A DNA stretch of 64,000 bases, taken from positions 62,001 through 126,000 of the IMG/VR virus record IMGVR_UViG_3300022745_000017; one strand, given 5' to 3'. The notes under the pieces are model-generated. The model saw only the letters and a list, made by a program, of their open reading frames with translations, did not search any database and was not told where the DNA came from. Numbering within the stretch: position 1 is the first letter of the stretch; every line of letters starts with the position of its first letter. A program made the translations under genes and the position numbers. Shown piece after piece: positions 2,716-42,757 of the stretch.

Positions 2716-4015
2716 GCAAGACTTCTATAAGCAAGCCCTAAAGAGTGGCTTGTACATGAATCTGCCATGGCTCATCTCCTGCTTTGCAGTCACGTCAGAA
2801 GAGCCAGAATCCTGGAAGGGCAACCCTTATCCTTACCGCGTTGTGAGGATGCCAACCGGAATGTTCTTTGTACACCCAACGACAGGTGTGCTAGAGCAGA
2901 TTGAGGGAGGTGATCCAACCAAACCACTGATCGATTTGTACGAAGAGCTCCCTGTGAGTCCCGAGGAGTGCATCATCGTCAAACAACCGATCGTGACAGA
3001 TTACGCTTGCTTGTTGTTGAACTACTTGACTCTGGTTTACCCCTTTGGCAATAAGTTAGAATTCATCAACGTGTACTTCGATATCCCTTACATCGAAGAC
3101 TTGATTGCGGGTCGTCTCAAGACAACACCTGATAAAGAGTCTGACCGACTAGAAACTGAGTTTTATGTCGATGAGTTCTTGAAGTTAGGCGAAGCTTGTG
3201 ACTTCATGCGGGGCTTAACGCAGGTGTGCTGCTGGGCTGGCACGGAGAAGTCGCTCTCCACTCACCCCGATGTGCCTAAGCGAAAGGCCGAGCTGTTCAA
3301 ACAATTTGAAGGTCGCTTAGACGATCCGATCGTCATCGCTTTCATCTCAGCTGAGCTCATCAAGCTCGACAAAGAGCACACCAAGGGCGACCCATGTGAG
3401 GACTTCTATCTCAGCAAGAAGTCACGAGAAGTCAACCGCGCTAAACTCTTCTTGATGGGTGGCGCTGAGTCCGGGTTGTCTGACGATGTGACTCGCGTTG
3501 CACTCATCAAGAACAGTCTGATTGAAGGTGTGGATATCAAGGATGTCCCCGTCAAGATCAACTCACTGCGGGCGGCTTCCTTTAACCGTGGTGCGCAAAC
3601 GGTGCTTGGTGGTGTGTCGGTTAAAGAGCTGCTGCGCGCACTGGCTAACTTGCGTGTCAAACAAGGTGACTGCAAAACTGTCGTGGGGTTGGAGTTCTTT
3701 GCTGATGCAAATAACGCTTTCCGTTTGGTCAATCGGTATCTGATCGACGGTAGTGAGACGGTGTTTGTCGAGAACCAGCAACAAGCTGAGTCCTACATCG
3801 GCAAGAAGCTGATGGTGCGTTCTCCGCAGTATTGCTCGTTTGGTGTGACTGACTTCTGTAGTGTCTGTGTGGGTAGTCTCTTGGCTGCTAACCCAATGGC
3901 TCTACCGATTGCTGGTTCTGACATGGGCTCTACGTTCTTGTCGATCTATCTGGCGATGGCTCACGGCAAGTCTACGGTGACAGAGTCTTTTAATTTAAAA
4001 GATATCTTGCACTGA
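2708..4015 (+). CDS. Split beta'-like RNA polymerase subunit (phiKZ gp80-like, virion RNAP)
   Basis: Bridge-helix-like SLRAASFNRGAQTVLGG, then DCKT..GL and the Zn site VRSPQYC...FCSVCVG as in RpoC. GTG start at 2708 with GGAG 7 nt upstream. Confidence 0.9.
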   Translation: MTKQDFYKQALKSGLYMNLPWLISCFAVTSEEPESWKGNPYPYRVVRMPTGMFFVHPTTGVLEQIEGGDPTKPLIDLYEELPVSPEECIIVKQPIVTDYACLLLNYLTLVYPFGNKLEFINVYFDIPYIEDLIAGRLKTTPDKESDRLETEFYVDEFLKLGEACDFMRGLTQVCCWAGTEKSLSTHPDVPKRKAELFKQFEGRLDDPIVIAFISAELIKLDKEHTKGDPCEDFYLSKKSREVNRAKLFLMGGAESGLSDDVTRVALIKNSLIEGVDIKDVPVKINSLRAASFNRGAQTVLGGVSVKELLRALANLRVKQGDCKTVVGLEFFADANNAFRLVNRYLIDGSETVFVENQQQAESYIGKKLMVRSPQYCSFGVTDFCSVCVGSLLAANPMALPIAGSDMGSTFLSIYLAMAHGKSTVTESFNLKDILH

Positions 4016-4047
4016 TATTCTATAGACGTTTTACAAGGAGAACGATC

Positions 4048-5031
4048 ATGCCTGAATCCTCTGACGACATCGAACAAATGTCCACCGAAGAGCTTGAAAA
4101 AGCTACAGCACCGGAAGAAACACTGACTCCAAGGGTAGAATTCCCTGTGGTTGGTGAACCAGAGCAAATCAAGCTCCCACAGTCTGTGGTCGACACGATC
4201 AAGTGGTTCTGTGAGAGGCCGCTAGTTGAGCTTGGTTCACAAACCGGTCAGCCAGTGGTTGTACCCGGAACCGTTGACGAGCCGCCTTTCTCGCCCCGTG
4301 GAAACATTGCGCCTGTACTGACTTCGGATGACCCGCAGTTTACCACCGCCGATAAGCCGGCTGAAGACCAAATCGCCTATGCGCGTGGCCTGACTCCGCA
4401 CGTCGTACAGATCGATGAATCCCCTTTTCAACCCTACCCATCTGAAGGAACTACCGTGAACCAACCTGAACAACTCACCCAGCCCGAAGAAGTCGAAGCC
4501 GCCCTGGCCCAAGAAGCCGTGCAAGCCGCTGTAGAAGTCGCTGCCAAAGTCTTCGAGAACAATGAGTTTCCAGCAGCTGTCAACGAGTACCTCGACAGCT
4601 TGCAAGGCAGCGACAAGTTCGAAGTGATCCATCTCTTTGAGCGCTTGCGCGAATACGTCAAGGGCATGGATCTCAAGAACGTCCAAAACGCTCAAACTGG
4701 CGCAGCCCATCAGCACACGCTGTTCAGCGCCATCATGCAGTTGTTTGAGCGTGTCGATTCGCAAGACTTCCGCACCGCCTTCACCTACGTGCGCCAAGTG
4801 TTTGCTCATCACCAAAAGACCATCTTCAGCTCCGACGCTGCGATGCGCTTTGTGGCCAACATGGATCTGGAAGCCAGTGAAAAAGACAGCTTCACGCGCC
4901 TGCTGATGCTGCTGATGCGCACCACCGGCAGCGACTACGCCTTGGCCGTAAAGAGCCTGAACCTGGGCCGCTGTATCGCTGGCCTGAGCGAAGAAGCACA
5001 GATGCGCGTGATCTCGTACTTCAAGAACTGA
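4048..5031 (+). CDS. Hypothetical protein with Pro/Glu-rich N-terminus and helical C-terminal domain (gp81-like position)
   Basis: 327-aa ORF, AGGAG RBS, C-ending codon bias. Confidence 0.8.
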   Translation: MPESSDDIEQMSTEELEKATAPEETLTPRVEFPVVGEPEQIKLPQSVVDTIKWFCERPLVELGSQTGQPVVVPGTVDEPPFSPRGNIAPVLTSDDPQFTTADKPAEDQIAYARGLTPHVVQIDESPFQPYPSEGTTVNQPEQLTQPEEVEAALAQEAVQAAVEVAAKVFENNEFPAAVNEYLDSLQGSDKFEVIHLFERLREYVKGMDLKNVQNAQTGAAHQHTLFSAIMQLFERVDSQDFRTAFTYVRQVFAHHQKTIFSSDAAMRFVANMDLEASEKDSFTRLLMLLMRTTGSDYALAVKSLNLGRCIAGLSEEAQMRVISYFKN

Positions 5032-5054
5032 TCCAGCCGATCTGGTAGTGTACT

Positions 5055-5096
5055 GTACAGGCAGAGGCGCTAGCGCCTCTGCCTGTACTTATGCCC
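5055..5096 (+). terminator. 34-bp perfect palindrome followed by TTATGCCC
   Basis: gtacaggcagaggcgc-ta-gcgcctctgcctgtac at 5055-5088. Confidence 0.7.
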
Positions 5097-5109
5097 ATTA
5101 TATTTCAAA

Positions 5110-5119
5110 CACATATCAC
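5110..5119 (+). promoter_or_regulatory. Putative early (virion-RNAP) promoter CACATATCAC
   Basis: The same 10-mer occurs at 10070, 46635 and 47988, with CACATATTAC at 34141. It resembles the phiKZ early consensus TATATTAC and always precedes accessory genes. Confidence 0.7.
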
Positions 5120-5170
5120 TCTTGTGAGCACATGGGTAACTGTGCTTACTTACTGTAGTAAAGGAAGAAA

Positions 5171-5731
5171 ATGCGAAATCTAAATTGCACTATTGATGTC
5201 TCATATTTTAGTGATGTTAGTGGTCCCGCGCCCTGGCTGTTACCTCATCTGGACTGCGGCATGGGATCTATTCTGCGACTACCTCTTACCGAAGTTATGT
5301 TTCCAAAGATGAGAAGTGCTGCGATTGACTTTCAGCAGAGTCTCATCAAAGGCAATGCGCTAGACGCCGTGGGGAAAATTCTCTTATGCCTAAATGAATG
5401 GGATGAGATTGAAATCTCTGCTTACGCAACGGTTGGATATAGTTGGTTAGCTAGTTGCTATGCTAAAACACAGAGTGTGGCTGACAAGTTTCTAGTGAGT
5501 GGGCAGTATATTCGCAAGGAGCTATCTGATTATTACAACCATATTTACGCTGTGTGGCGCGATAAACAAACCAATGATGAAACAATAGAGAGTCTGTACA
5601 ACCGTGTTGGGAAGGCGCTTCGAAATATGTTGTTCATGGTCTATACCCTGACCAACAACAATGAAGCGCTGGCGACTACGCTTATGGGGGAGTATGTAGA
5701 TACCCTAGCTGAGCAATTAGCCAAAGCGTAA
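5171..5731 (+). CDS. Hypothetical protein (AT-rich moron-like insert)
   Basis: 186-aa ORF with its own promoter, AAGGA RBS and downstream hairpin. Confidence 0.7.
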   Translation: MRNLNCTIDVSYFSDVSGPAPWLLPHLDCGMGSILRLPLTEVMFPKMRSAAIDFQQSLIKGNALDAVGKILLCLNEWDEIEISAYATVGYSWLASCYAKTQSVADKFLVSGQYIRKELSDYYNHIYAVWRDKQTNDETIESLYNRVGKALRNMLFMVYTLTNNNEALATTLMGEYVDTLAEQLAKA

Positions 5732-5743
5732 TTACTCACGGTG

Positions 5744-5776
5744 CTGATACCTCGGCTAACTTAGCCGAGGTATCAG
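5744..5776 (+). terminator. 16-bp inverted repeat
   Basis: ctgatacctcggctaa-c-ttagccgaggtatcag just after the stop codon. Confidence 0.65.
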
Positions 5777-5794
5777 TGACTTATTTGATCCTAT

Positions 5795-5871
5795 TTTTCT
5801 TCAGTCACATATATCGGTAGTGAGTTGGTAATGATGCTACGCTGACTCATATCCTTTAATGCATCAAGGAG
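5795..5871 (+). ncRNA. Conserved promoter plus pseudoknotted 5' leader, copy 1
   Basis: P1 5821-5828/5842-5849; loop TGATGC 5832-5837 complementary to GCATCA 5861-5866; GGAG 5868-5871. Homologous to 12967-13037 and 59450-59526. Confidence 0.65.
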
Positions 5872-5878
5872 TTCTATC

Positions 5879-6322
5879 ATGGCTACAAAGTTTTCCCTGA
5901 GTGCAGCAGACTTCTGCTTGTCTGAAGAGCAAATCGCTGCTGTCAATCTGACCGTGGAAATGGGAAGCGAGGCTTCGGCCCGCTTCCATCAGAAGTACGC
6001 TGCTTTGCGAGTGGTGCTCTTGCCGGCATTTGTGCCGGCGCGTTTGAAGGCCCTGCGTGATGTCGGTGTCCAAGCCGTCCCCGTGGAAGCAGGCACAATT
6101 GAAGTGCACCTTCCACTCATCGCATGGCTGAAGGCCAGTCCTAGCTGGGATGTGCCGGCAGTGCCAGCCCCATCGAGCCGGGGTTACACTCGGTCTACGA
6201 CCACTTCACTCGGTGAAGTGGTTACAGTCATTGTGGTCGCTGCGGTGTGTTACGCCGCCATCTTCTACATCGCGCGCGGCATCGTCCGCGCGCTCGACGG
6301 TGAGCATGACCGAGCAGCCTGA
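5879..6322 (+). CDS. Hypothetical protein with C-terminal transmembrane helix
   Basis: 147 aa; hydrophobic VVTVIVVAAVCYAAIFYIA; GGAG RBS. Confidence 0.75.
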   Translation: MATKFSLSAADFCLSEEQIAAVNLTVEMGSEASARFHQKYAALRVVLLPAFVPARLKALRDVGVQAVPVEAGTIEVHLPLIAWLKASPSWDVPAVPAPSSRGYTRSTTTSLGEVVTVIVVAAVCYAAIFYIARGIVRALDGEHDRAA

Positions 6323-6323
6323 G

Positions 6324-6385
6324 CTCACAGCTACAGGGATTGCCCCTGTAGCTGTGAGGAAAACCCTAGCGGGTTTTCTTTTTTT
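6324..6385. terminator. Tandem hairpins between convergent genes
   Basis: ctcacagctacaggg/ccctgtagctgtgag, then gaaaaccc-tagc-gggttttc plus a T-run. Confidence 0.7.
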
Positions 6386-6392
6386 CTTCTTC

Positions 6393-8078
6393 TTACATTG
6401 TTGCAATCATTTTGTCATAGGCTTGTACGATTTGCTCAAGGGTCGGGGCTCCGCAGATCAGTGTCACAATCTCAACAGCGTTAGTGCGTCCAGCAGACAG
6501 ATTGATGGTCTGCATGCGCTGCAAATCCTCAGAGATGCCTTCGATACGAATAGGCTCCTTAGAAGTCGTTTGCTTACACATGTTAAACACACACTGCCCA
6601 TTAGGGTAGCTGCCTGAGACATCTAAGTCAAACACAAAGATACGGATGTTAGTCCGCAAGTTTTGGTTTTCTAAGACGCACTTGAGCCCGTTGTCTGCCA
6701 CCATGTGAGACGGTAGCATAACGATCCAACCATCGATGCCAAGTGTCTCATCGTCAAACTCATCAGCCATCTCTTTAGAGGTCGTGGCCATGACGTGGCC
6801 GCGCTTTAAGACAAAGTGGTGTAGAGCGTCAATGGTGCGCTTAGGCTGAGATGGGAACTTCTCAAAGTCCGTACAACCTGCAAACAGTGGGAGCTGAATA
6901 GCCATGTCTTTGGTGACATCGTCGAGCTCCTCCATAATGACTACGTCACCTTGGTTATAGATGATGTACTCAAGTGGGTGGTACTTTTGCATGAATTGGT
7001 GTTTAGCCAACCCTTGGTATTTCTTAGCTGGTTCGAACTCAAGTTTGCTGGCCTTGGTGTTCTTTCTCACCAAGGCATCTAGGCCATAGCTAGGCTCCTC
7101 AGGTGAGCCTTGACGGCACTGATAGTAGCCGCACATCTGGTCGATGATGTAAAACGACGCAGGTGCGATCACTGTGTTCCAGCGATGCACGGGCTTGAAG
7201 TTCATGCGCTTGTTAGCGTTGGTAATGCGGTTAGCTTTACCTTCGATGAACTCGTAGTAGCGATAGCTAGCTGGAATGCTTGGGTCACTAAAGAGGTCTT
7301 CTAGCTTGACGTTAGCGCGAGCACATGCTTCTTGAATACGCCTGATGTCAAAGACCATGTTCCAGATACCTAGGAAGTCTGGTTTGATCTCGTGCGCTTT
7401 ACCAATAGACTTTTGAACGACTTCAATTTCTGTGTCGCAGAAGACGTAGTGCAGCGTAAGGTTGCGCCGCTTGATCAAGTCGCCTAAGTGCTCAGCAGCT
7501 AGGGCGCGTAATCTCTCTTCGACATTGGTGTAGCCTGCTACAAACCGCTTTTGTACATACGTGTAGACATTTGTCTTATGGCTGATAGAAGCCATCAAGA
7601 TGTGATTCTTGGTGTCGTAGTGCACGACATCAGTCTCGGTGTCGTACCCCGCAAAAGTATAAGCCGTGTTAAGGCCGTACTTGTCTAGGTAAGACTGTTT
7701 GAGCAAAGATGTCGAGCTGATGTCTGCGCCGTAGATGTAGGGAGACTTCTGTAAGTCACGCTGTGAGCCTCTAAACCACGGCATCTCCATAGAGGTAGCC
7801 ATCGAGCGCACCAGCCTGGTTTGAGTAGACTCGTAGCGATTGAGTCTCTCAATTTCCTCCCACTCTTTCTTATCCTCGTGATTGCGAAAGCCTTTCTTGG
7901 TAATGTAGTATGGGCGTTTATAGTTTAGAATCTTGCGCAGGTAAGGCACAATGGTGCCATCGTCTAGGTGGATCTGTTCTTTGACGACATGAACATCGTC
8001 GTCTGTTTCCTTATTTTTTACACAAATAGCAAAGCGGCACTCAATGCCGCGAATACGAGATGGGTCGATTTTTGACAT
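6393..8078 (-). CDS. N-terminal subunit of a split family-B DNA polymerase (3'-5' exonuclease plus palm motif A; phiKZ gp82-like)
   Basis: ExoI GYDTETD, ExoII WNMVFD, ExoIII YNQGD, then motif A-like DLDVSGSYP. The ORF ends before motifs B and C. Confidence 0.85.
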   Translation of the reverse strand: MSKIDPSRIRGIECRFAICVKNKETDDDVHVVKEQIHLDDGTIVPYLRKILNYKRPYYITKKGFRNHEDKKEWEEIERLNRYESTQTRLVRSMATSMEMPWFRGSQRDLQKSPYIYGADISSTSLLKQSYLDKYGLNTAYTFAGYDTETDVVHYDTKNHILMASISHKTNVYTYVQKRFVAGYTNVEERLRALAAEHLGDLIKRRNLTLHYVFCDTEIEVVQKSIGKAHEIKPDFLGIWNMVFDIRRIQEACARANVKLEDLFSDPSIPASYRYYEFIEGKANRITNANKRMNFKPVHRWNTVIAPASFYIIDQMCGYYQCRQGSPEEPSYGLDALVRKNTKASKLEFEPAKKYQGLAKHQFMQKYHPLEYIIYNQGDVVIMEELDDVTKDMAIQLPLFAGCTDFEKFPSQPKRTIDALHHFVLKRGHVMATTSKEMADEFDDETLGIDGWIVMLPSHMVADNGLKCVLENQNLRTNIRIFVFDLDVSGSYPNGQCVFNMCKQTTSKEPIRIEGISEDLQRMQTINLSAGRTNAVEIVTLICGAPTLEQIVQAYDKMIATM

Positions 8079-8202
8079 GTTTTTAACTTAGAATAGGGTG
8101 GGGATTGGTGATCTATTAGATGTATCCGTTGTTTTAAGTTTTGCACTCAAGCTGGACTTAAAGCATTTTTCATGTTCAGATTTATTTTTCTTTGGTGTCA
8201 AC

Positions 8203-9510
8203 ATGCGCTTAAATTTAGCATCTGAGGGCTATACCTCAGCGATGGAAAGCATTGAGTTTCAGTCGTACACAGTTTTCAATGAGCTGTGCGCAGCGGTGAA
8301 GGCTTGTCGTGAAAAAGGTCGCAATGGGCAAAAGATCAAGGAATACTACGAAAGTGGTGCGCCCCGGTTGATTGCCGAGGTTATCGAGAAAAGCTTTGGC
8401 TTTAAGAAGATCAACTTGTTCGATGGCGCTCCCACCGCGTTCCTCCCTCTCATCAACCGCAACCACATTTTCCTGAGCCCCTTCGCTAAGGAAGCTAGTG
8501 TCGATCCCGACATTGACTTCGATGCAAGCTCAGATATGTCGCGGCTTTTGAACCGTGACAAAAAGGAGATGGCTTACGGCAGTGTTGACATTCGCACAGC
8601 CAAACTCACGGGGGCGTTCCTGGAAATTCCTTGCGTGATGCTGCTGCCTCTCGATGAATTGCTCGGCAAGAAAACGCCGTCAGCTCTGACCGATGAGGAA
8701 TTCACCAGCATCATCTTGCATGAAGTTGGGCACTTGTTTACGACGTTCGAATATGTCGATCGCACGATCAAGACCAACCAAATCTTGCACGCCATGATCG
8801 CGGCTCAAAACAGCAAAGTGCCACCCGATCAACGCAAGGTCGTCTTCACCAAGTTTGGCCAAAAGATCAATATGTCTGAGAAAGACATTGAAGATGCTTT
8901 GGTGATCAAGGACAAGACGGCTCTTGGTGTGGTGGTGGTGAACGCATCGATTGATCACTCTAAGAGTGAGCTCGGTGAGAGTGTTTACGACACCACGAGT
9001 TGTGAAGCGCTGGCCGATCAATTTGCTATGCGCATGGGATGCCGCTCCTACCTGGCTTCTGGCTTGGACAAGATCTTGTCGTACTACGGCATGCGCAGCG
9101 CTGGCTCGGTTGGTCGGTTCTTCGCTAACGCTGTTGCATTCGTTAGCTTGATCTGTGCGACGGTTGTGACTTACGGGATTTTGCTCATCATCTTGATCGC
9201 TTGCACGACGCGTGAAGATGACTATGATCGCCCGCGCTCACGCTTTACACGCATGAAGCTCCAGCTCGTCGAAGCACTCAAGCAAGACGATCTGGATAGT
9301 GAGATGAAGACGGAGTTGACCAAAGAGATTGAAAACGTAGAAGGTATCTTGAAGCTCTACGATGACAACGACGGACTCATTGAAAAGATGGCTCTGTTCT
9401 TTAAGTCCTCTTTGCGCAAAGAAAAGAAAATGGAGTTGTTCCAAAAGGACTTGGAACTCTTGGCTGGCAACGACTTGTTCATCAAGTCTGCTAAACTCTC
9501 CACCATGTAA
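8203..9510 (+). CDS. Head/virion protein with zincin motif (phiKZ gp84-like position)
   Basis: IILHEVGH, downstream EALADQFA, hydrophobic segment near the C-terminus, N-terminal ASE/AME candidate prohead-protease sites. Start moved to MRLNL. Confidence 0.75.
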   Translation: MRLNLASEGYTSAMESIEFQSYTVFNELCAAVKACREKGRNGQKIKEYYESGAPRLIAEVIEKSFGFKKINLFDGAPTAFLPLINRNHIFLSPFAKEASVDPDIDFDASSDMSRLLNRDKKEMAYGSVDIRTAKLTGAFLEIPCVMLLPLDELLGKKTPSALTDEEFTSIILHEVGHLFTTFEYVDRTIKTNQILHAMIAAQNSKVPPDQRKVVFTKFGQKINMSEKDIEDALVIKDKTALGVVVVNASIDHSKSELGESVYDTTSCEALADQFAMRMGCRSYLASGLDKILSYYGMRSAGSVGRFFANAVAFVSLICATVVTYGILLIILIACTTREDDYDRPRSRFTRMKLQLVEALKQDDLDSEMKTELTKEIENVEGILKLYDDNDGLIEKMALFFKSSLRKEKKMELFQKDLELLAGNDLFIKSAKLSTM

Positions 9511-9532
9511 CTGTTTTTAAAGGAAGATCAAA

Positions 9533-10012
9533 ATGATCAACACGCGCTTTATGAACCTTGAGGAATATATCCGCAGCAAGGTCACCAACCCAGGCAACTT
9601 CCGCAACACAGTAGGCATCTGCGCTGGCATCGCTGTGTCACGCCTGGCTCCTTTGCCGACCAGTGAGATGGACAACATCGAGCAACATTGGCAAGACAGT
9701 GTCGCTTATGAGGCTCGGCGGGTGCTGGGATTGTTCAATGAGCAAATGGCCATTGACATTGACCTGGCTGTTGACACGGCTCGGCAGTTCTACATGGTGC
9801 GCTACACAGCTGCTTACTGCAACATCTGCTTGACACCCTTTGGTGCGCAAGGGGACAAACAGCCGTCTTTCTTGGAGTCTTACCAAGGGGCTTCCCAGTT
9901 TGTGAGCCAAGAGCTACAAGCCAAGCTCAACGCTTACCCTCTGGCTTACGCCAGTATTTGCAACCGCATTGCCATGGTGATGCGTGAAGAGTTCTTCATC
10001 AACAAAGCCTGA
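9533..10012 (+). CDS. Small virion protein (gp85-like position)
   Basis: 159 aa, AAGGA RBS, synteny. Confidence 0.7.
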   Translation: MINTRFMNLEEYIRSKVTNPGNFRNTVGICAGIAVSRLAPLPTSEMDNIEQHWQDSVAYEARRVLGLFNEQMAIDIDLAVDTARQFYMVRYTAAYCNICLTPFGAQGDKQPSFLESYQGASQFVSQELQAKLNAYPLAYASICNRIAMVMREEFFINKA

Positions 10013-10016
10013 TCGC

Positions 10017-10054
10017 TACTCCTCACTACCGTTTCAGGTAGTGAGGAGTATGCC
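10017..10054 (+). terminator. 14-bp hairpin plus TATGCC
   Basis: tactcctcactacc-gtttca-ggtagtgaggagta, then tgcc. Confidence 0.7.
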
Positions 10055-10069
10055 TCAATTTTTTACAAA

Positions 10070-10079
10070 CACATATCAC
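10070..10079 (+). promoter_or_regulatory. Putative early promoter CACATATCAC
   Basis: Exact copy of the repeated motif, ahead of the accessory island. Confidence 0.7.
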
Positions 10080-10108
10080 AACAATACAATGTCTTAAGAA
10101 AGGACACT

Positions 10109-10468
10109 ATGTTAACAGGCATCAATGAGCGATTGATAGTCGTCAAGACTTGTATCTTGACCGATGCGGTTGAGCCAGCGACTATAGACGCTGCCATGGC
10201 ATTTTTAAGTTTAATGGCAATAAGTCAGCCTAGGAGCATTGGGTTCTACAACACTGGTATGTTGGTTGAGTTTATCGTGTCTCGTAAAGATTACCCAACA
10301 GAGACCAGTGCCAAGATCACCTACCCTAAGTGCGTGGTAGGTTTGCCAGACGGACGCCTGTCAATGATGTTTTTAGTGCCCTTCCATTCAAAAACTACCT
10401 TCGACTACGCCAAAAGTAAGTCGGAGTTTATCGGCGACCAACCCTCTAACTTTGGAGAAAAACGATGA
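10109..10468 (+). CDS. Hypothetical protein
   Basis: 119 aa, AGAAAGGA RBS. Confidence 0.65.
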   Translation: MLTGINERLIVVKTCILTDAVEPATIDAAMAFLSLMAISQPRSIGFYNTGMLVEFIVSRKDYPTETSAKITYPKCVVGLPDGRLSMMFLVPFHSKTTFDYAKSKSEFIGDQPSNFGEKR

Positions 10469-11040
10469 GTTTCTTGGAAAAACTACGGGCCACTGAGCCA
10501 GCGGATATTAAGGCGTACACCTACTCAAGTCTCGATGTCCGCTTCACGACACAGGAAGCTAACTACATCGAAGCCATGAGTGCCGCATGTGCCAATCGTC
10601 ACGCAAAATACGATGCACAGCTAAGGGCTTGGGTGACGCCGGAGTTTATCGTAGAGACACCTGCAAGTGTGCTTAAATCTAGCCCAGAGTGGCCTGAGAA
10701 GGTCAGGTTGGAACCAACCGAGATCAGGGTTCTCGAACCAGATACGCTGATCCAGGGCTATGGCACAGCACTTAATGACTACTTACGTGTGCTATGGTCG
10801 TTGCTGACAGATGATATTCTCGCGCATCTGTCAGGTGCATCTGGTCGTATTAACGTGATGATAGCTTACTGTTTTGTATCGGTGAGCAAGATTGAATTCT
10901 GCTTGATATTGTCCGTTGACCGGGTGCGTTACGCTATTACAATCCGGTCAACGGATGAGCTCTACTGCCACACTGTGCGTAGCAATGTTGAAGTAGGTAA
11001 TTTTTACAGTCACCACAAACCCGTTCCCAATAAGGAATAA
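10465..11040 (+). CDS. Hypothetical protein
   Basis: 191 aa, ATGA overlap with the upstream ORF, GGAG RBS. Confidence 0.7.
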   Translation: MSFLEKLRATEPADIKAYTYSSLDVRFTTQEANYIEAMSAACANRHAKYDAQLRAWVTPEFIVETPASVLKSSPEWPEKVRLEPTEIRVLEPDTLIQGYGTALNDYLRVLWSLLTDDILAHLSGASGRINVMIAYCFVSVSKIEFCLILSVDRVRYAITIRSTDELYCHTVRSNVEVGNFYSHHKPVPNKE

Positions 11041-11050
11041 GGAGTCTACC

Positions 11051-12016
11051 ATGTTCGATATTCGCCACTATCAAGCCTTGCCAGACCATCACCCTCTGTG
11101 TGATTGGTGTGTGCGTGTTTACACCACCTACGCCGCATGTACTGAGGTCGCTGTAGTGCGTAAGAACGACTACAACGGGCTCAACAGTAACGGAGTTCCT
11201 ATCTCGCCTTACCGTGGGGATCAGCACGATCGCAAGATCGTATTGTTGAGTGGTGACTATAGATCCCCGCCTTCTGTCGTAAAGTTCATGGTGAACGCCG
11301 CTAAGGATTTGGCTAACCATCTGAACTTCGCTCGCCGGCAAAAGTACCGCAACAATCCTGAAGCAATGCAAATGCTCGGTGATGATGCGGAAAAGCCCAC
11401 TGTCATTCGACCGCCCAGGGGCGAGTTCCTGGAGTTCCACGCCAACTGGATGTGGGGGCACGATAACAAAATGTTCAAGTTTGTCACGCCGCTGCTTTAT
11501 ATCTGCGCGAACGGCCCCCTGCCCAAAGTACAGCTGTACTTGGCAAGCGACACCATCCAGGAAATCAAGTACATGCGGCGTGTTGGGTCTCTTAATAAAG
11601 ACCCTGAGCTGATCTCGAAGTTTTCGGACTACGTCGACGGTTTCTTGGCGGGGATGGATCGCACTGCGGCATATGCCTTGGCGAGTGACTTGATCTCTAT
11701 ACTGCCTCAAGAGACCCCAGACACCGCACTCTCTTTCAACCTGGCCTCTCTGATCCAATCGAATGGTGAAGAGATGAGCAAGGTCGTCTGGGAGCGCCTG
11801 CACCTGATTCGCACAGGGATCTATACCGTCATGGTGACGGAAGATAATGATGGTCAAGCGATCATGCAAACCATCAGTGCCTCTATGCACTTGTTGCTGC
11901 TGATCGCCATGATTCGTTTCATCTTGCTGACGATCAAGGTCTGCCCGGCAGCTGAGCTTGAGGCTCTGACACCACGCCTCACCGAACAAGTCAAAATCCT
12001 GGCCAACTGTCAGTAA
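11051..12016 (+). CDS. Hypothetical protein
   Basis: 321 aa, AAGGAG RBS. Confidence 0.75.
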   Translation: MFDIRHYQALPDHHPLCDWCVRVYTTYAACTEVAVVRKNDYNGLNSNGVPISPYRGDQHDRKIVLLSGDYRSPPSVVKFMVNAAKDLANHLNFARRQKYRNNPEAMQMLGDDAEKPTVIRPPRGEFLEFHANWMWGHDNKMFKFVTPLLYICANGPLPKVQLYLASDTIQEIKYMRRVGSLNKDPELISKFSDYVDGFLAGMDRTAAYALASDLISILPQETPDTALSFNLASLIQSNGEEMSKVVWERLHLIRTGIYTVMVTEDNDGQAIMQTISASMHLLLLIAMIRFILLTIKVCPAAELEALTPRLTEQVKILANCQ

Positions 12017-12020
12017 CCCC

Positions 12021-12044
12021 AGAGGCACCTCTAGAGGTGCCTCT
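12021..12044. repeat. 24-bp perfect palindrome
   Basis: agaggcacctctagaggtgcctct, intergenic. Confidence 0.7.
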
Positions 12045-12060
12045 AACTAAGGAATTCAAA

Positions 12061-12603
12061 ATGGCAAAAGCAGTCAAAAAAGAACCCGTTAAAATCCGCG
12101 AAGCCCTGCTCTTCTTTCGCCGCTACACAGATCAGTCAATCCTGCTCACAACCCACTATGAAGGCAGTCTGCTAGTCTTGGGTCTGCCTAAGGTAAGCTT
12201 ACCTGGCGACAACGATAAGATCGCAAATACAGATGCCTTTATTGCCAAAGAAGTCAGAAAACAGGCCGCTTTGCCGCTGGCCGTACCCATCCGAAAGTTG
12301 TACATGAATACAACTGCCTATGGTCCTAAGGATGATTGGTTTAAGCGAAACACCAAGGATTTTAAACTCAACCCGTTCCAGACGGTGGCATACACACCTG
12401 AGCTGCATTGCTACATAGAGTCTTCTCAGTCTACTTACCCGGCTTTGCCGGGCGGCACATGTTACGCCGAGATGCCAAAAGGTGATATACGACAAGCACT
12501 CGAAGAGTGGCGTGTCATCACAGGGGCAGATATGATCTGCCCCCACACCATCGCTGCGTTTGGAATCATACGCGCCGTCGACTCGTACAATAAGCCAGCG
12601 TGA
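12061..12603 (+). CDS. Degenerate Nudix-fold protein, paralog of 13044..13469
   Basis: Aligns by eye: KEPVKIREALL/KELVRVRAFL, VLGLPKVSL/IMCLPGGGV, FIAKEVRKQAALPLAVPI/ALHREVQEEVSLRLKSPV. Nudix-box acids are lost. Confidence 0.6.
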   Translation: MAKAVKKEPVKIREALLFFRRYTDQSILLTTHYEGSLLVLGLPKVSLPGDNDKIANTDAFIAKEVRKQAALPLAVPIRKLYMNTTAYGPKDDWFKRNTKDFKLNPFQTVAYTPELHCYIESSQSTYPALPGGTCYAEMPKGDIRQALEEWRVITGADMICPHTIAAFGIIRAVDSYNKPA

Positions 12604-12613
12604 GGATAGGGAC

Positions 12614-12961
12614 ATGATCACCCGTTTTACGATCTTCATACACACCCCCGAGTCAAAGACACTTGTGGAACAGCTCCCTGATGGTATTTCTCTGAGTTAT
12701 CCAGAAGTGCTGATGGACAGCCAGGCTGACTTAGAGACGTTCTTGATCAAAGACTTAGGTATCCCGAAGGCTGCCGAAATTGCTTGGTTCAATGATGCTT
12801 TTTGTATGGTTCACATTCGTGTCGACCCGTCGGTAAACCAGATGCTGGCTTTGCGCAAGTATTGGCCTGACATCGCTGGCTTACCGTGGGATGATGCTAG
12901 GACACGCCGGTTTGTACATCGCCCAATTGACCTCACTAAGAAGAATAGTTCGAACCTATAA
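12614..12961 (+). CDS. Hypothetical protein
   Basis: Start moved to MITRFT after the GAGGA/AGGG RBS. Confidence 0.65.
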   Translation: MITRFTIFIHTPESKTLVEQLPDGISLSYPEVLMDSQADLETFLIKDLGIPKAAEIAWFNDAFCMVHIRVDPSVNQMLALRKYWPDIAGLPWDDARTRRFVHRPIDLTKKNSSNL

Positions 12962-12966
12962 AAACA

Positions 12967-13037: not shown

Positions 13038-13043
13038 ATAGAT

Positions 13044-13469: not shown

Positions 13470-13515
13470 GACATAGGCAGTACAGCGAGTGGCGTAAGCC
13501 ACTCGCTGTACTGCC
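13470..13515. terminator. 18-bp hairpin with GTAA loop between convergent genes; TATGTC follows on the minus strand
   Basis: ggcagtacagcgagtggc-gtaa-gccactcgctgtactgcc; T-run on the plus side. Confidence 0.75.
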
Positions 13516-13527
13516 CGTACTTCTTTT

Positions 13528-16443
13528 TTATTTCTTCGACACGATCTTGAAACTAATGTCGATGGCATTCTCGACAGTCAGTCTGCCATCAGTAGATGCG
13601 GCTAAGCGCTTCTTCAGAGACAATCGGTCTGAGTCGCTCACTAGCGTAACGACACTATAAGTATCGTCGATCAGTTTGCTAATCTCCACATCGTGCAACA
13701 GATCACCTAAGACATCTCGGATATCTGCAATGATGGCACTCACACTCACAATGCTCTTATCAAGACCACGCTTGATTGCTTTGATGGTCGCTTCTCGCAG
13801 CGTTGAGCAAAGCACGGTGTTGTTGTAAGTCTTTTCCGTGACATAGAGTTTGACGGTAAATGACTGAGCTGCGCTCACACTTCGCTGGGTAGAACCGTCC
13901 ACCAGCACATTGACTTGACCTTGGTCGACCTTCGGGTGGAAGTAAATAGCTGTGCGGTCAAGCACGCGCTTGTTCATCTCCACCAGGGTGTCTGTGATCC
14001 AATCCACCATCGTGCTGATAGCTGTCTTCAGGTAGTTTGTGGCTGATGCGTCAGTTGCGAAGTAGTAAGCTCCGTCGATCAGTGTAACCCCGATATGGCG
14101 AACCAAGGCAGCTCGGTAATTGGGGTCAGGGATCGGTACACCATTAGCGTCCAAAATCACATCACCCTCTCGGTAAGCGTAAATCGGCTGACCTGAGCCA
14201 TCTAACTGAGCGTCGCCTGCGCTATGGAGCTTTTGATTCCATGTCAACACGCCATCAACTACAGTAAATGGCAAGCCTGTGGTCGGGTCTAGCTGATACA
14301 CATCTTGCTCATATGTCAGCACGATGTCAGCCGTTCTGCGCAGGTAGTTCTGCACAGATACACTGCTGCGGTGCTGAGCCCACAAATTCTTGAGTGCAGT
14401 ACCAAACTTGAGCTGTATAGTTTCGTGTGTGAGGCCGTGAAACCCTTGTGTCAATTGATCGTCGGGTAACAATGCATCAAAGCTACTGGGCAAAGGTGTG
14501 TCGACAGATTTGTGACTATACACCAAGTCAAACGACTGTAGCAAATCACAGTAAGCGGTGGATGCACTACCGCCTTGTGTCACATCGGTCAAGAACAGTC
14601 TATCGTTGGCATCGATGAAGAAGTCTGTACTCAGAATGAACCGGTACTTGCGCTCATCGCTGCTGGAGATGCGCGCTATCAGACTGCCTTCAATATGGTA
14701 GCGAACACCGTCTGCTGGAGAAACAAATGACAACCACACACTCAGGTTGGCGTCATCTTCTGCTTTGAAGAAATCATTGGAAGACGTGTAGACATCTAAG
14801 GTGTAGAACTGCTGGAATCGCTTAAGGATGTAGTTACCTGCCGTAGCGACACTCAAGATGGATTCATCTTGATAATCTACAAAACTCTTGGTCACCGCCA
14901 GAGGGGCTTCCAGGTAGTAAGGCCTGACAGACAAAACATCTGTTTGCGCATCGATCACGTAGTGAAACGGTGAGAATGCATAAGCGTTTGTTTTGAAGTG
15001 CTCTGCTAGTTGCGCAGGAGTTAGTGCTAGCAAGGCATTGACTTCTTGTGCATCGAGCATGGTGTAAACACCATTGTCGTAGCGATAAAGTGTCTTAGGC
15101 GAGAGTGTCACTGCTTTGTCGCTGTGGTCAGTGACGCCGTAGCCGAGCATCGCTTGCTTGAGCGTCATCTCACACATCGCTAGCGACGAGGAGGCAGCGC
15201 CTAACAGCGGGTTGTCTGTTGGTGCCGGTAGGCCAGCCGTAGCCAGGTAAACTCGGCTCGTCACAGTGTCAACATCCTTGACCAAGGTGAAGCCTTGTTC
15301 TTCAAGTGCTGTGCTGAGCTGAGCGTCTGTGATGGGGATGTCTTGCACACCTAGTGAGCGATCAATTACACGCTGGCGAATAGTCTCAAAGCTATCGGGG
15401 TCACTACCACCCGTGACAACGTCAGTGGAGTAAACCATAGCGTTATCGATATTACCAAACGCTGCGGTATAAACGGTCGAATCCGAAGGGTCGATGGCTT
15501 TCCACTCATACTGCCAATCGCTCGGGCTGTACGCTGACAAAGCCATGTTGACAGCGCCCAAGGTCTCGTACACCACGATGCGGATACGCCCCGATGCTAA
15601 GCCGCTGGCAATGTAGTTGACAGGAATTATCACAGTGACTTTCTTATCACTGTACTGAACGATCGCTGTCAATACCAAGGGGTCATACAGGTAGGTCGAA
15701 GAGGTAGTTTGAATCTCTTTCCAAACACCTGAGACCTCCTGCCACACTCGCACAGCGTAGGGCTTGTCAGAGATGGTGATATCTGTCTTGAGTCCAGATG
15801 TCCACGACAAGTCTACCAAACGAGTTGTTGTTTTGAACTGATCGGTAGGGATCTTGAGCTGGAAATACTCTTGTCTATCTGTGGCAGTAAATGCCAGTGT
15901 CTCGATCTCATTGGTACTCAAAGACTTCAATGGGGAAACAACGTCGAGATCCCACTTTACGACAATCGCACCACTAGCAGTTTCCTGGATGACAATCGGG
16001 TATTGCATCGAAAACGTGGTCGAGCCTACCTTGAAGCATGAGTCCCGTGGAATCACTAACTTACGAGAAGCTGTGTTGGGGATGTCTACAAAGTTAGCCA
16101 AAAGATCGCTTTTGCGCAAAATCAAGTAAACCCAAGTGGAAGCCGGCTTGGCCCACAGGCCAATCTGGTCTTGGGTTGACATGTGCGGATAGAGCTCTTC
16201 CATGGTGGTGGCTAAGCGAGGATGTGTCTTGCGCAAGGTGGCTTGCAACTCATCGCACACAGCAGCTGTGCCAGCGGTGAAGGCTTCTAGCAAAAACACC
16301 ACAGGGTTGCTGGGATCGACGATATCGATCTCACCGGCGTTAGCCTTGTCCAGTGCTTTGAACATGACTTCGCGCATACTCAGTGGGTTATACTTGTAAT
16401 TGGCCAAGTCACCGACATAATCGCTAAATTTAGATGCAGCCAT
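13528..16443 (-). CDS. Baseplate wedge protein (T4 gp6/baseplate-J-like; phiKZ gp87-like)
   Basis: 971 aa from MAASKF; baseplate-J-like TGGSDPDSFETIRQRV; size and position match recalled gp87. Confidence 0.75.
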   Translation of the reverse strand: MAASKFSDYVGDLANYKYNPLSMREVMFKALDKANAGEIDIVDPSNPVVFLLEAFTAGTAAVCDELQATLRKTHPRLATTMEELYPHMSTQDQIGLWAKPASTWVYLILRKSDLLANFVDIPNTASRKLVIPRDSCFKVGSTTFSMQYPIVIQETASGAIVVKWDLDVVSPLKSLSTNEIETLAFTATDRQEYFQLKIPTDQFKTTTRLVDLSWTSGLKTDITISDKPYAVRVWQEVSGVWKEIQTTSSTYLYDPLVLTAIVQYSDKKVTVIIPVNYIASGLASGRIRIVVYETLGAVNMALSAYSPSDWQYEWKAIDPSDSTVYTAAFGNIDNAMVYSTDVVTGGSDPDSFETIRQRVIDRSLGVQDIPITDAQLSTALEEQGFTLVKDVDTVTSRVYLATAGLPAPTDNPLLGAASSSLAMCEMTLKQAMLGYGVTDHSDKAVTLSPKTLYRYDNGVYTMLDAQEVNALLALTPAQLAEHFKTNAYAFSPFHYVIDAQTDVLSVRPYYLEAPLAVTKSFVDYQDESILSVATAGNYILKRFQQFYTLDVYTSSNDFFKAEDDANLSVWLSFVSPADGVRYHIEGSLIARISSSDERKYRFILSTDFFIDANDRLFLTDVTQGGSASTAYCDLLQSFDLVYSHKSVDTPLPSSFDALLPDDQLTQGFHGLTHETIQLKFGTALKNLWAQHRSSVSVQNYLRRTADIVLTYEQDVYQLDPTTGLPFTVVDGVLTWNQKLHSAGDAQLDGSGQPIYAYREGDVILDANGVPIPDPNYRAALVRHIGVTLIDGAYYFATDASATNYLKTAISTMVDWITDTLVEMNKRVLDRTAIYFHPKVDQGQVNVLVDGSTQRSVSAAQSFTVKLYVTEKTYNNTVLCSTLREATIKAIKRGLDKSIVSVSAIIADIRDVLGDLLHDVEISKLIDDTYSVVTLVSDSDRLSLKKRLAASTDGRLTVENAIDISFKIVSKK

Positions 16444-25101: not shown

Positions 25102-25130
25102 TGAGCCTGTAGTAACCCTACAGACCTAAA

Positions 25131-25164
25131 TAGAGGCAGGGGATCAAACCCCTGCCTCTATGCC
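25131..25164 (+). terminator. 12-bp hairpin plus TATGCC
   Basis: tagaggcagggg-atcaaa-cccctgcctcta, then tgcc. Confidence 0.7.
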
Positions 25165-31733: not shown

Positions 31734-33069
31734 CGAAACGACGCTTTACTTGGATGCCATGCGTGTGATCTCTAACACCGCTACGGCACCCAACGTCAAG
31801 GTAGACTACATTCTTGTCACACCGATTGAAGAGATTGAGCCGCTCTACCAAACGAATAAAATCGTCAGACGTGACTATGTCGATGGCTACGCCGATGAAA
31901 CCAGTGTAACGCTGGCGTTTGGGGCAGGTACTTACGCTAAACGCATTTTAGCCAATCGCACCAACCTGAGAATGCGTGTGAAGAAAGTGTTTACCAAAAC
32001 ACTAACTCGCACCACGGATGATACTGCCGATACACAGGCCATGGAGTTTACAGCCATTCTAGCAGATGAGGGACAAAACCCTACCGTAGGGCAGGGCCGA
32101 GAATCTGACGACGAAGACGCTTTGAACAACACACAAATCGTTGAGGTTATGTTTCAGTTGATCGACCCTGCGATTGAGCGGCTGAAAGCTACCTATGTCG
32201 GAGGCGTGCCTAGGCAAAGCACACCTGAGCAAATCCTACAGATGTACGTGGTCAAAACAGTGGAGTCTCTAAAGGCCGATGATAAGATTCTCATTGACAG
32301 GGTGCAAACCGATACACCCAACAACAAGTCTAAAATCGAGCAGCTCACCATCCCGCAGAAACTACCAGTCTACGAGATCCCTCGGTTTTTACAGTCTCGC
32401 TGCGGCGTCTATAGTGCTGGGCTTGGTACATTCATTCAAAACCAAGTCTGGTACACCTATCCACTTTTTGATACCACCAGGTTCAATGAGCGGGCACAGA
32501 GACTAACCGTATTGGTCTTGCCTAAGAACAAGTTCTCCAGTATCGAGGTCACGTATGAAATCCCTTCTGAGAATAGTCTGACAATTGTCACCACCAGTGA
32601 AACAGCATTCAGAGATGATGCTGGTACACAGGCACTCAATCACGGTAACGGAGTGCGGTTTGCTGACTTAGAAGCTCAAGATGACTTGATTGTCACTAAG
32701 GGCAATAAGACAACGATTGACAAGTCTAAAGTCAGTAATGCGTTCGTAGCGACAAAGCGGGAGAATGGCGTTAACTACGCTCCGGCTGCGGCAGTCAGTG
32801 CGACAGCTAATCCTTACCAGATTTACTCCCAGCTCTCGGCTCGCACAGGTGCTTTGTTTAAGTTCATTTGGGAAAACTCCCAAGGTGATCTGCTTTTACC
32901 TGGCATGGCTGCAAAGGTGATTTACTTTGATGAGAAAGACATTCAGACGCTAGATGGTGTGGTGGTAGGTGTAACTCACGTTAGCACAAACCTAGGGGGT
33001 GTGAATAGCAGTGGTACATCTGTCAATAGTTTTGTGAACTTGTTTGTTAGGCCCTCTGAGGCGGCATAG
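31723..33069 (+). CDS. Virion protein, probable baseplate hub (gp101-like)
   Basis: 448 aa from MEFNETT, beta-rich; last gene of the core block; assignment by synteny. Confidence 0.6.
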   Translation: MEFNETTLYLDAMRVISNTATAPNVKVDYILVTPIEEIEPLYQTNKIVRRDYVDGYADETSVTLAFGAGTYAKRILANRTNLRMRVKKVFTKTLTRTTDDTADTQAMEFTAILADEGQNPTVGQGRESDDEDALNNTQIVEVMFQLIDPAIERLKATYVGGVPRQSTPEQILQMYVVKTVESLKADDKILIDRVQTDTPNNKSKIEQLTIPQKLPVYEIPRFLQSRCGVYSAGLGTFIQNQVWYTYPLFDTTRFNERAQRLTVLVLPKNKFSSIEVTYEIPSENSLTIVTTSETAFRDDAGTQALNHGNGVRFADLEAQDDLIVTKGNKTTIDKSKVSNAFVATKRENGVNYAPAAAVSATANPYQIYSQLSARTGALFKFIWENSQGDLLLPGMAAKVIYFDEKDIQTLDGVVVGVTHVSTNLGGVNSSGTSVNSFVNLFVRPSEAA

Positions 33070-33109
33070 CTCTCACTGGTACATGGCGTAAGCCATGTAC
33101 CAGTGAGAG
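33061..33109. terminator. 18-bp hairpin with GTAA loop; CTATGCCGC follows on the minus strand
   Basis: ctctcactggtacatggc-gtaa-gccatgtaccagtgagag between convergent genes. Confidence 0.75.
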
Positions 33110-38675: not shown

Positions 38676-38718
38676 CTCTCTACCCTGACGCGTTATTGTC
38701 AGGGTAGAGAGCTATGCC
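38676..38718 (+). terminator. 14-bp hairpin plus CTATGCC
   Basis: ctctctaccctgac/gtcagggtagagag. Confidence 0.7.
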
Positions 38719-42710: not shown

Positions 42711-42757
42711 CCGACATAGTCCTGTACTGCTGTGCCTAGGCACAGCAGTACAGGACT
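42711..42757. terminator. 40-bp perfect palindrome between convergent genes; TATGTC follows on the minus strand
   Basis: agtcctgtactgctgtgcc-ta-ggcacagcagtacaggact at 42718-42757. Confidence 0.75.

What the first reader, a model, noticed from the sequence alone, without database searches (positions are those of the whole stretch)
5055..5096. Long hairpins followed by TATG(C/T)C instead of a U-tract
Seen, read in the direction of the upstream gene: 5055-5088+TTATGCCC, 10017-10050+(TA)TGCC, 25131-25160+(TA)TGCC, 38676-38711+CTATGCCC. On the minus strand: 33109-33070+CTATGCCGC, 13515-13476+TATGTC, 42757-42718+(T)ATGTCGG. Seven 12-19-bp stems lack a poly-U tail but share this tail. Known: TATG is the phiKZ late-promoter core, and the non-virion RNAP used it in vitro only on pre-opened templates. 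Inference: either a phage-RNAP-specific terminator or processing signal (favoured, since three face into convergent genes), or a hairpin/cruciform-assisted start site.
Basis: partly seen in the sequence, partly recalled or inferred. Interest (0 to 1): 0.62.

Follow-up and report, generated by a model that had tools for sequence, protein, structure and literature searches.

The report
Jumbo-phage terminators: hairpin plus TATGYC
The long hairpins followed by TATG(C/T)C are real and far from chance; they are this uncultured phiKZ-like jumbo phage's copies of a transcription-terminator signal already mapped by RNA sequencing in phiKZ and 201phi2-1, here almost without the usual run of U's.

Summary
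The window belongs to a 218-kb freshwater phiKZ-like (chimallivirus) genome. That genome has 77 perfect hairpins of at least 10 bp, against 0-2 in shuffles. Of their 154 tails, 17 carry TATGYC within 4 nt of the stem, against 0.5-1.1 expected (P <= 2e-15).

Each tail lies 0-45 nt behind the stop codon of a gene on the same strand. About half face the 3' end of a convergent gene. None sits at a divergent junction.

The same signal, a hairpin plus (Y)TATG(Y)(C), is the strongest tail feature in phiKZ, 201phi2-1, Burkholderia phage FLC9 and Xanthomonas phage Xoo-sp14 (GC 38-58%). It also recurs at one orthologous gene junction in most of 19 jumbo phages, on stems of unrelated sequence. It matches the published phiKZ terminator motif (hairpin + TTATKYYGT). 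Five published 201phi2-1 termination sites fall 1-2 nt (four of them 2 nt) past the fourth base of this tetranucleotide (G in four, A in one).

So this is a known kind of terminator, not a start site. "Phage-polymerase-specific" is not shown. No RNA data exist for this phage. One reading stays open: the polymerase's own TATG pocket may read the tail as a pause signal that replaces the U-tract.

The parts
5055..5095 (+). Terminator-type element: 15-bp stem, CTAG loop (5055-5088), one T, then TATGCC (5090-5095).
   Evidence: Lies 24 nt after the stop of gene 4048-5031 (+).
10017..10054 (+). Terminator-type element: 14-bp stem, 6-nt loop; TATGCC at 10049-10054, its first two bases inside the stem.
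   Evidence: Lies 5 nt after the stop of gene 9533-10012 (+). Among the differences listed for related strains, only loop positions 10030-10036 fall inside the element, but that list was truncated.
25130..25164 (+). Terminator-type element: 13-bp stem, 6-nt loop; TATGCC at 25159-25164.
   Evidence: Lies 29 nt after the stop of the internal-head-protein-like gene 23563-25101 (+).
38676..38718 (+). Terminator-type element: 14-bp stem, 8-nt loop, C, then TATGCC (38713-38718).
   Evidence: Lies 9 nt after the small ORF 38521-38667 (+). The next gene starts at 38746.
33063..33109 (-). Terminator-type element read on the minus strand: 18-bp stem (33070-33109), C, then TATGCC (33068 down to 33063). 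It faces and overlaps the last codons of the convergent + gene 31708-33069.
   Evidence: Lies 22 nt after the stop of the minus-strand gene 33131-34093.
13470..13515 (-). Terminator-type element read on the minus strand: 18-bp stem (13476-13515), then TATGTC (13475 down to 13470). It follows the 993-aa virion gene 13528-16509 (-), the phiKZ gp87 orthologue.
   Evidence: Most of 19 jumbo phages show hairpin + TATG tails at this same junction.
13516..13535 (+). T-rich tail of the same hairpin read on the plus strand, behind the NUDIX-like gene 12891-13469. One hairpin carries two tail types.
   Evidence: Only this strand is called by the classic terminator scan.
42713..42757 (-). Terminator-type element read on the minus strand: 18-bp stem with CTAG loop (42718-42757); TATGTC at 42718 down to 42713. 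It faces the convergent + gene 41954-42706.
   Evidence: It abuts the stop of the minus-strand gene 42757-43497.
5110..5116 (+). CACATAT core of a separate promoter-like motif (A-run, spacer, CACATATCAC), 15 nt downstream of the 5090 tail.
   Evidence: 27 of the 37 CACATAT copies in the genome lie in the upstream regions of genes.
10070..10076 (+). CACATAT core of the same promoter-like motif, 16 nt downstream of the 10049 tail and 39 nt before the start codon at 10109.

Best explanation
The hairpin + (Y)TATG(C/T)C elements are transcription terminators of the type conserved in phiKZ-like nucleus-forming jumbo phages (Chimalliviridae).

Shown:
- The window belongs to such a phage.
- The elements sit just behind genes on the same strand, on the transcribed side.
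- The same signal is family-wide, and RNA 3' ends have been mapped to it in two cultured relatives.

Inferred:
- In this phage the nascent RNA folds the 12-19-bp hairpin and the transcript ends about 2 nt past the G of UAUG. That is 5-8 nt behind the stem, the usual distance for hairpin-driven release.
- Because these phages transcribe with their own two multisubunit polymerases, those enzymes are the likely users.
- The conserved TATG, rather than a U run, supplies the slow-down or weak-hybrid step.
- At convergent gene pairs one hairpin serves both directions.
For: Identity of the phage:
- A 993-aa virion protein is 23-35% identical to proteins of 290 jumbo-phage records.
- The genome encodes a nuclear-shell (chimallin) protein, an RNA polymerase beta-like subunit and a homologue of phiKZ nvRNAP subunit gp123 (E 7e-74).

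Position:
- In every clear case a gene on the same strand ends 0-45 nt before the stem.
- 16 of 18 convergent junctions hold a hairpin of at least 10 bp, and no divergent junction holds a hairpin with a TATG tail.
- At co-directional junctions the tail is on the transcription-downstream side in 11 cases. It is on the other side in 2 at the same close spacing and 2 more at 5-7 nt.

Spacing: the T of TATG starts -3 to +4 from the stem end in 25 of 29 cases.

Family-wide signal:
- TATG is the most enriched tail 4-mer in phiKZ (10x), the 201phi2-1 sample (18x), FLC9 (58x), Xoo-sp14 (73x) and this genome (9x).
- A T4 control shows 0 of 24 tails, against 1.1 expected.
- At the orthologous gp87/gp86-like convergent junction of 19 phages the stems differ completely in sequence but always pair. 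Most are flanked by TATG on one or both sides.

Experimental anchor:
- The phiKZ motif is a hairpin followed by TTATKYYGT, found at 61 mapped terminators (PMC10914365). The matching motif A of 201phi2-1 occurs 59 times (PMC11512511).
- The published termination coordinates 179552, 183876, 189851, 229201 and 230027 each fall on a C just after such a tail. It is 2 nt past the fourth base at four sites and 1 nt past the G at 189851; the tetranucleotide is TATG at four sites and TATA at 230027.
Against: - No RNA data exist for this phage. It is known only from freshwater metagenomes, so transcript ends here are inferred by homology.
- Mapped 3' ends in the relatives cannot separate termination from processing.
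- Only about a third of this genome's long hairpins carry the tail. 17 gene-downstream tails are T-rich and 38 fit neither class, so the tail is not required for every hairpin.
- The stems here are longer than the phiKZ stem consensus and unlike it in sequence.
Confidence: 0.8

Rival explanations
1. The element is an RNA processing and stability signal. Transcripts read through, an endonuclease cuts at or near UAUG(C/U)C, and the hairpin then protects the new 3' end from exonucleases.
For: - The 3' ends mapped by ONT-cappable-seq in relatives cannot tell termination from cleavage.
- Stems of 12-19 bp are longer than termination needs.
- The tail is a defined sequence rather than a U run.
Against: - Elements from 201phi2-1 with this tail reduce downstream reporter expression as strongly as, or more strongly than, the lambda T0 terminator in uninfected cells. 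That is the behaviour of a terminator.
- The published 3' ends lie 8-9 nt behind the stem, the classic release distance.
- No dedicated nuclease was identified.
Confidence: 0.1
2. The element is a late promoter whose TATG start site is helped by an upstream hairpin or cruciform, either exclusively or as a second function at co-directional junctions.
For: - TATG with G as +1 is the phiKZ late-promoter core.
- It is bound as single-stranded non-template DNA by gp123.
- Many gp123 pocket residues are kept in this phage's homologue.
- At co-directional sites a gene starts roughly 10-200 nt downstream.
- Hairpin-less TATGTC copies occur 50-90 nt upstream of genes at divergent junctions.
Against: - At least 10 of about 22 hairpin-attached tails point into the 3' end of an opposing gene.
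- None is at a divergent junction.
- Both-sided tails occur at convergent junctions in the relatives.
- P119L has no hairpin.
- Separate promoter-like motifs follow several tails.
Confidence: 0.07
3. The element works at the DNA level: the palindromes are binding, cleavage or recombination sites, for example for a dimeric protein or a structure-specific nuclease.
For: - Several elements are perfect palindromes with CTAG centres.
- GTAC is 5.7-fold enriched in the stems.
Against: - At co-directional junctions the tail is mostly one-sided and follows the direction of transcription. A symmetric DNA site would not do this.
- Stem sequences are unrelated between sites and between phages, while pairing is kept.
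- The elements are confined to gene ends.
Confidence: 0.03

Closest known systems
Conserved terminator motif of phage phiKZ (Putzeys et al. 2024, PMC10914365): stem-loop followed by TTAT(G/T)YYGT, found at 61 of 133 mapped termination regions.
   Same: - A GC-rich hairpin is followed at once by (T)TATG, two pyrimidines and often G.
- It lies behind genes and works in both directions at convergent pairs.
- My scan of 100 kb of phiKZ finds TATG in 39 of 102 tails.
   Different: - Stems here are 12-19 bp of varied sequence, not the 7-10-bp CCYCCCC/GGGRRGG consensus.
- The T's before TATG are mostly missing.
- The sixth base is C more strictly.
- Termination has not been measured for this phage.
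Terminator motif A (with motif B) of phage 201phi2-1 (PMC11512511).
   Same: Five published termination sites lie on hairpin + TTTATGCC-type tails. Those elements terminate in vivo.
   Different: The 201phi2-1 tails keep three U's next to the stem and work with host polymerase. Whether the U-poor tails of this phage would do so is unknown.
Canonical intrinsic (Rho-independent) bacterial terminators.
   Same: A GC-rich hairpin, with the inferred RNA 3' end 5-9 nt behind it. Some hairpins in this genome do have T-rich tails.
   Different: There is no U-tract. The tails average 3.1 T in 8 nt and a fixed TATGYC takes its place. A classic scan misses them.
phiKZ late promoter TATG and the gp123 beta-lobe pocket that binds it (PMC4666361, PMC12809450).
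   Same: The tetranucleotide is identical. This phage has a gp123 homologue with a partly conserved pocket.
   Different: Promoters lie upstream of genes and need no hairpin. The elements studied here lie behind genes and always have one.
Consensus elemental pause of multisubunit RNA polymerases (pyrimidine at the RNA 3' end, G incoming). This is from my own knowledge and was not tested here.
   Same: U followed by G within UAUG fits the pyrimidine/G pause rule.
   Different: The pause consensus does not explain the conserved T and A two and three bases earlier.

Membership tests
phiKZ-type conserved terminator (hairpin + TTATKYYGT) | Stem-loop directly followed by (T)TAT(G/T) and pyrimidines. 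| tested here: met
   - 25 tails have TATG starting -3 to +4 from the stem end.
- The fifth base is C/T in 21 of 25 and the sixth is C in 20 of 25.
- Enrichment P <= 2e-15.
phiKZ-type conserved terminator (hairpin + TTATKYYGT) | Located behind a gene on the same strand, and bidirectional at convergent gene pairs. | tested here: met
   16 of 18 convergent junctions carry a long hairpin. Both-sided tails occur at genome positions 149960 and 217760, and in phiKZ, FLC9 and Xoo-sp14.
phiKZ-type conserved terminator (hairpin + TTATKYYGT) | Carried by a phiKZ-like phage that has its own multisubunit RNA polymerases. | tested here: met
   gp123 homologue, RNA polymerase beta-like subunit and chimallin, and virion proteins shared with 290 jumbo-phage records.
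phiKZ-type conserved terminator (hairpin + TTATKYYGT) | Stem sequence consensus CCYCCCC ... GGGRRGG. | tested here: not met
   Stems here are longer and varied, often with GTAC and CTAG loops. Stem sequence also differs among the other genera. I treat it as lineage-specific rather than defining.
phiKZ-type conserved terminator (hairpin + TTATKYYGT) | RNA 3' ends map to the tail. | not testable with these tools
   No RNA run holds this phage. The feature was shown only for 201phi2-1, using published coordinates.
Canonical intrinsic terminator | U-tract (T-rich run) directly after the hairpin. | tested here: not met
   4 of 24 TATG tails reach 5 T in 8 nt. The classic scan does not call the sites at 5055, 10017 or the minus-strand reading at 13476.
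phiKZ late promoter | TATG positioned upstream of, and pointing into, a gene that it drives. | tested here: not met
   Three of the seven window sites, and at least 10 of about 22 genome-wide, point into the 3' end of an opposing gene.
phiKZ late promoter | Primary transcripts start at the G of TATG. | not testable with these tools
   No RNA data.

The most novel reading that the evidence does not exclude
The conserved TATG in the tail is not a decayed U-tract. It is read during elongation by the same non-template-strand pocket of the beta-like polymerase subunit (phiKZ gp123) that recognises TATG at late promoters.

On this reading the pocket holds the polymerase at U/G while the long hairpin forms. 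One four-base word would then mean 'start' when it stands alone and 'stop' when a hairpin precedes it. This would be a sequence-specific, U-tract-independent form of intrinsic termination for this polymerase lineage.

Facts consistent with it:
- TATG stays the top tail signal from 38% to 58% GC, while the flanking T's disappear.
- The spacing to the stem is tight.
- Published 3' ends lie 1-2 nt past the fourth base of the tetranucleotide.
- 7 of 14 pocket residues are identical and 3 more conservatively replaced, in a protein that is only 29% identical overall.

Facts against it:
- In phiKZ the G alternates with T.
- Several lineages use TTTTATTT tails instead.
- TATG tails follow chimallin, reductase and virion genes alike.
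- U-rich versions work with host polymerase.
Probability: 0.3. Interest if true: 0.75.

Novelty: new member of a known kind. Interest (0 to 1): 0.45.

Why it matters
It gives a practical rule for annotating transcription units in uncultured phiKZ-like phages. A long hairpin followed by TATGYC marks a gene-end signal that classic terminator finders miss because there is no U run.

The comparison across GC contents also shows which part of the published phiKZ motif is conserved. It is TATG plus pyrimidines, not U-richness. That tetranucleotide is the one the non-virion polymerase binds at its late promoters. The link is a clear idea about how these unusual polymerases stop, and it can be tested at the bench.

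Tried and rejected
- **Close relatives by DNA or protein.** A near-identity DNA search of phage records found nothing. A single-protein scan of viral contigs found nothing. I could not align close relatives for base-by-base covariation at the window's own sites.
- **RNA evidence.** All six public runs that hold this DNA are metagenomic and none is on record as RNA.
Among the listed differences only loop changes fall in hairpin 10017-10050. The list was truncated and contigs break at the 5055 palindrome, so this is weak support only.
- **Early/late split of tail types.** I tested whether TATG tails mark late (virion) genes and T-rich tails mark early genes. The idea is not supported: TATG tails follow chimallin, ribonucleotide reductase and virion genes alike. 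There is a strand bias. By my count, about 12 of the 17 terminators behind minus-strand genes are TATG-type if distant and variant tails are included. On the plus strand 13 of 60 have TATG near the stem. I could not explain this bias.
- **Controls.** The first 50 kb of Bacillus phage AR9 had no GC-rich perfect hairpins, so it was uninformative. T4 served as the negative control.
- **Other look-ups.** An Rfam scan of the window gave no hits. The supplementary tables of the two ONT-cappable-seq papers are not held. I therefore could not relate all published start and stop sites to the motif.
- **Gene map.** It comes from a crude ORF scorer of my own. It missed at least the gp123 homologue, so counts by junction type are approximate.

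Full report
**What the window is.** The 64-kb window is bases 62,001-126,000 of a single 217,973-bp contig with 50% GC and direct terminal repeats. It has no near-identical phage record. Its proteins place it among the phiKZ-like, nucleus-forming jumbo phages:
- A 993-aa virion protein is 23-35% identical to proteins of 290 jumbo-phage records. It is the orthologue of phiKZ gp87.
- The genome encodes a chimallin-like nuclear shell protein and an RNA polymerase beta-like subunit.
- It encodes a homologue of the phiKZ non-virion polymerase subunit gp123 (E 7e-74).

The DNA occurs only in freshwater and aquatic metagenomes, and none of the six runs that hold it is on record as RNA. Sigma-70-like promoter matches are at chance level, 16 against 15.7 expected. 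That fits a phage which does not rely on host polymerase.

**Check of the observation.** All seven hairpins and tails are present as described.
- The genome has 77 perfect hairpins with stems of at least 10 bp and loops of 3-10 nt. Dinucleotide-preserving shuffles gave 0-2.
- Of the 154 tails (both orientations), 17 carry TATG(C/T)C starting between 3 nt inside and 4 nt beyond the stem end. Random genome windows predict 0.53 and random intergenic windows 1.10 (P 1e-20 and 2e-15). Shuffled tails never exceeded 5.
- 25 tails carry TATG at that spacing. Aligned, they give not-A, T, A, T, G, C/T (21 of 25), C (20 of 25).
- The tails are not U-tracts. They average 3.1 T in the first 8 nt. The classic hairpin-plus-T scan does not call sites 5055 or 10017, and calls 13476 only on the opposite strand.

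**Where the elements sit.** I used a crude gene map of my own. By this map every clear hairpin+TATGYC element lies behind a gene on the same strand, whose stop codon is 0-45 nt before the stem.
- About half lie at convergent gene pairs and point into the end of the opposing gene. In the window these are 13476, 33070 and 42718.
- 16 of the 18 convergent junctions carry a long hairpin. No divergent junction carries a hairpin with this tail.
- At co-directional junctions the tail is on the transcription-downstream side in 11 cases. It is on the other side in 2 at the same close spacing and 2 more at 5-7 nt.
- Hairpin 13476-13515 carries TATGTC on the strand of the virion gene and a T-rich tail on the strand of the NUDIX-like gene.
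- After several plus-strand elements a different, strongly conserved promoter-like motif with a CACATAT core follows within 15-30 nt. Examples are at window 5110 and 10070. The TATG is therefore not needed to explain expression of the next gene.

**Relatives.**
- The first 50 kb of phiKZ shows the same arrangement: short GC-rich hairpins followed by TTATG, on both sides at convergent pairs.
- TATG is the most enriched four-letter word in hairpin tails of phiKZ (10x, GC 38%), a 201phi2-1 sample (18x), Burkholderia phage FLC9 (58x, GC 56%), Xanthomonas phage Xoo-sp14 (73x, GC 58%) and this genome (9x).
- In the two GC-rich phages 12 of 17 and 19 of 23 hairpins have it on at least one side. Almost no tail there reaches 5 T in 8 nt.
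- A T4 control has 0 of 24.
- I then looked at one orthologous place, the junction between the gp87-like and gp86-like virion genes. It covers 19 phages of Pseudomonas, Ralstonia, Burkholderia, Xanthomonas, Erwinia, Salmonella, Klebsiella, Serratia, Vibrio and Aeromonas. Every one has a hairpin there and every stem sequence is different. Most are flanked by TATG on one or both sides. A few lineages (Caitlin, SPLA3, FBKp24, the EL-like phage) have TTTTATTT-type or other tails.

Structure and tail are thus conserved while sequence is not.

**What is already known.**
- ONT-cappable-seq of phiKZ found 133 termination regions. 61 share a stem-loop followed by TTATKYYGT (PMC10914365).
- The same motif A occurs 59 times in 201phi2-1. 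Eight terminators of that phage were active in uninfected P. chlororaphis (PMC11512511).
- I fetched five of the termination coordinates printed in that paper. Each falls on a C just after a hairpin tail of this type: 2 nt past the fourth base at four sites and 1 nt past the G at 189851. The tetranucleotide is TATG at four sites and TATA at 230027. The C lies 8-9 nt behind the stem.

The elements in this window are new examples of a described terminator class, in a U-poor form.

**Promoter reading.** TATG with G as +1 is the phiKZ late-promoter core. It is necessary but not sufficient (PMC4666361). The beta-like subunit gp123 binds it as non-template single strand (PMC12809450).
- The model promoter P119L has no upstream hairpin.
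- In this genome hairpin-less TATGTC copies lie 50-90 nt upstream of genes at several divergent junctions. They are candidate late promoters, but the enrichment is weak.

The hairpin-attached copies do not behave like promoters, for the positional reasons given above.

**Mechanism.** The best-supported account is hairpin-driven termination by the phage's own polymerases, with the RNA ending about 2 nt past the G. Two things remain inference: what the TATG contributes, and which polymerase reads it.
- TATG tails follow chimallin, ribonucleotide reductase and virion genes alike. I could not tie them to one temporal class or one polymerase.
- The more novel reading is that the gp123-type pocket reads the tail as a pause signal. 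It fits the GC-independent conservation, the tight spacing and a partly conserved pocket. Of 14 pocket residues, 7 are identical and 3 conservatively replaced, against 29% identity overall. It is not demonstrated, and some lineages do without the G.
- Processing rather than termination cannot be excluded from the sequence.

**Limits.**
- There is no transcript evidence for this phage.
- My gene map is approximate.
- The strain comparison by laid contigs was truncated and weak.
- The supplementary tables of the two key papers were not available.

Noticed in passing
window 5761-5891, 12926-13056, 59416-59546; also genome 20076-20206, 27198-27328, 126513-126643, 129961-130091, 136862-136992, 138375-138505, 139160-139290, 145699-145829: A repeated cassette of about 110 nt, 11-12 copies, each ending at a start codon. 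It runs: T-rich run, CAGTCACATATATC, a leader hairpin with a conserved 10-13-nt loop, then a pentamer just before the Shine-Dalgarno sequence. That pentamer is complementary to the loop and changes together with it between copies (GATGC/GCATC, GGTGT/ACACC, AGTGC/GCACT). It looks like a promoter plus a structured 5' leader, perhaps a loop-to-ribosome-site pairing that controls translation. Rfam gave no match in the window.
   Followed up: partly
window 5110, 10070, 34141, 43537 (minus strand), 46635, 47988; more elsewhere in the genome: A second promoter-like motif: an A-run, 6-8 nt, then CACATATCAC, lying 37-90 nt before start codons. 27 of the genome's 37 CACATAT copies lie in the upstream regions of genes.
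   Followed up: partly
stems and loops of the 77 long hairpins, e.g. window 5055, 13476, 33070, 42718, 59639, 62961: GTAC is 5.7-fold enriched in the stems (16 of 77 stems). CTAG makes up 9 of the 28 four-base loops, so several elements are perfect DNA palindromes. I have no explanation for this.
   Followed up: no
window 33110-33125 (+); genome 187283-187297 (-) and 212290-212304 (+): Three hairpins at convergent junctions carry TGTGCC where TATGCC would be expected. This may be a variant tail.
   Followed up: no
genome 33413 (-), 42076 (-), 178797 (-), 203814 (+), all outside the window: Hairpin-less C/G-TATGTC copies lie 50-90 nt upstream of start codons at divergent junctions. They are candidate late promoters of the phiKZ type, but the enrichment is weak.
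   Followed up: partly
whole genome, terminators behind minus-strand genes: By my count, about 12 of the 17 hairpins behind minus-strand genes have TATG-type tails if distant and variant tails are included. Behind plus-strand genes, 13 of 60 have TATG near the stem. The gene functions found do not explain this bias.
   Followed up: partly
window 6057-6164: In contigs of related strains (runs X3 and X6) a stretch of about 100 nt is replaced by a diverged stretch of the same length. Contigs of all runs break at 5781-5848, where the repeated cassette lies.
   Followed up: no
window 4000-18000: Sigma-70-type promoter matches are no more frequent than in shuffles (16 against 15.7). This fits transcription that does not use host polymerase.
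   Followed up: no
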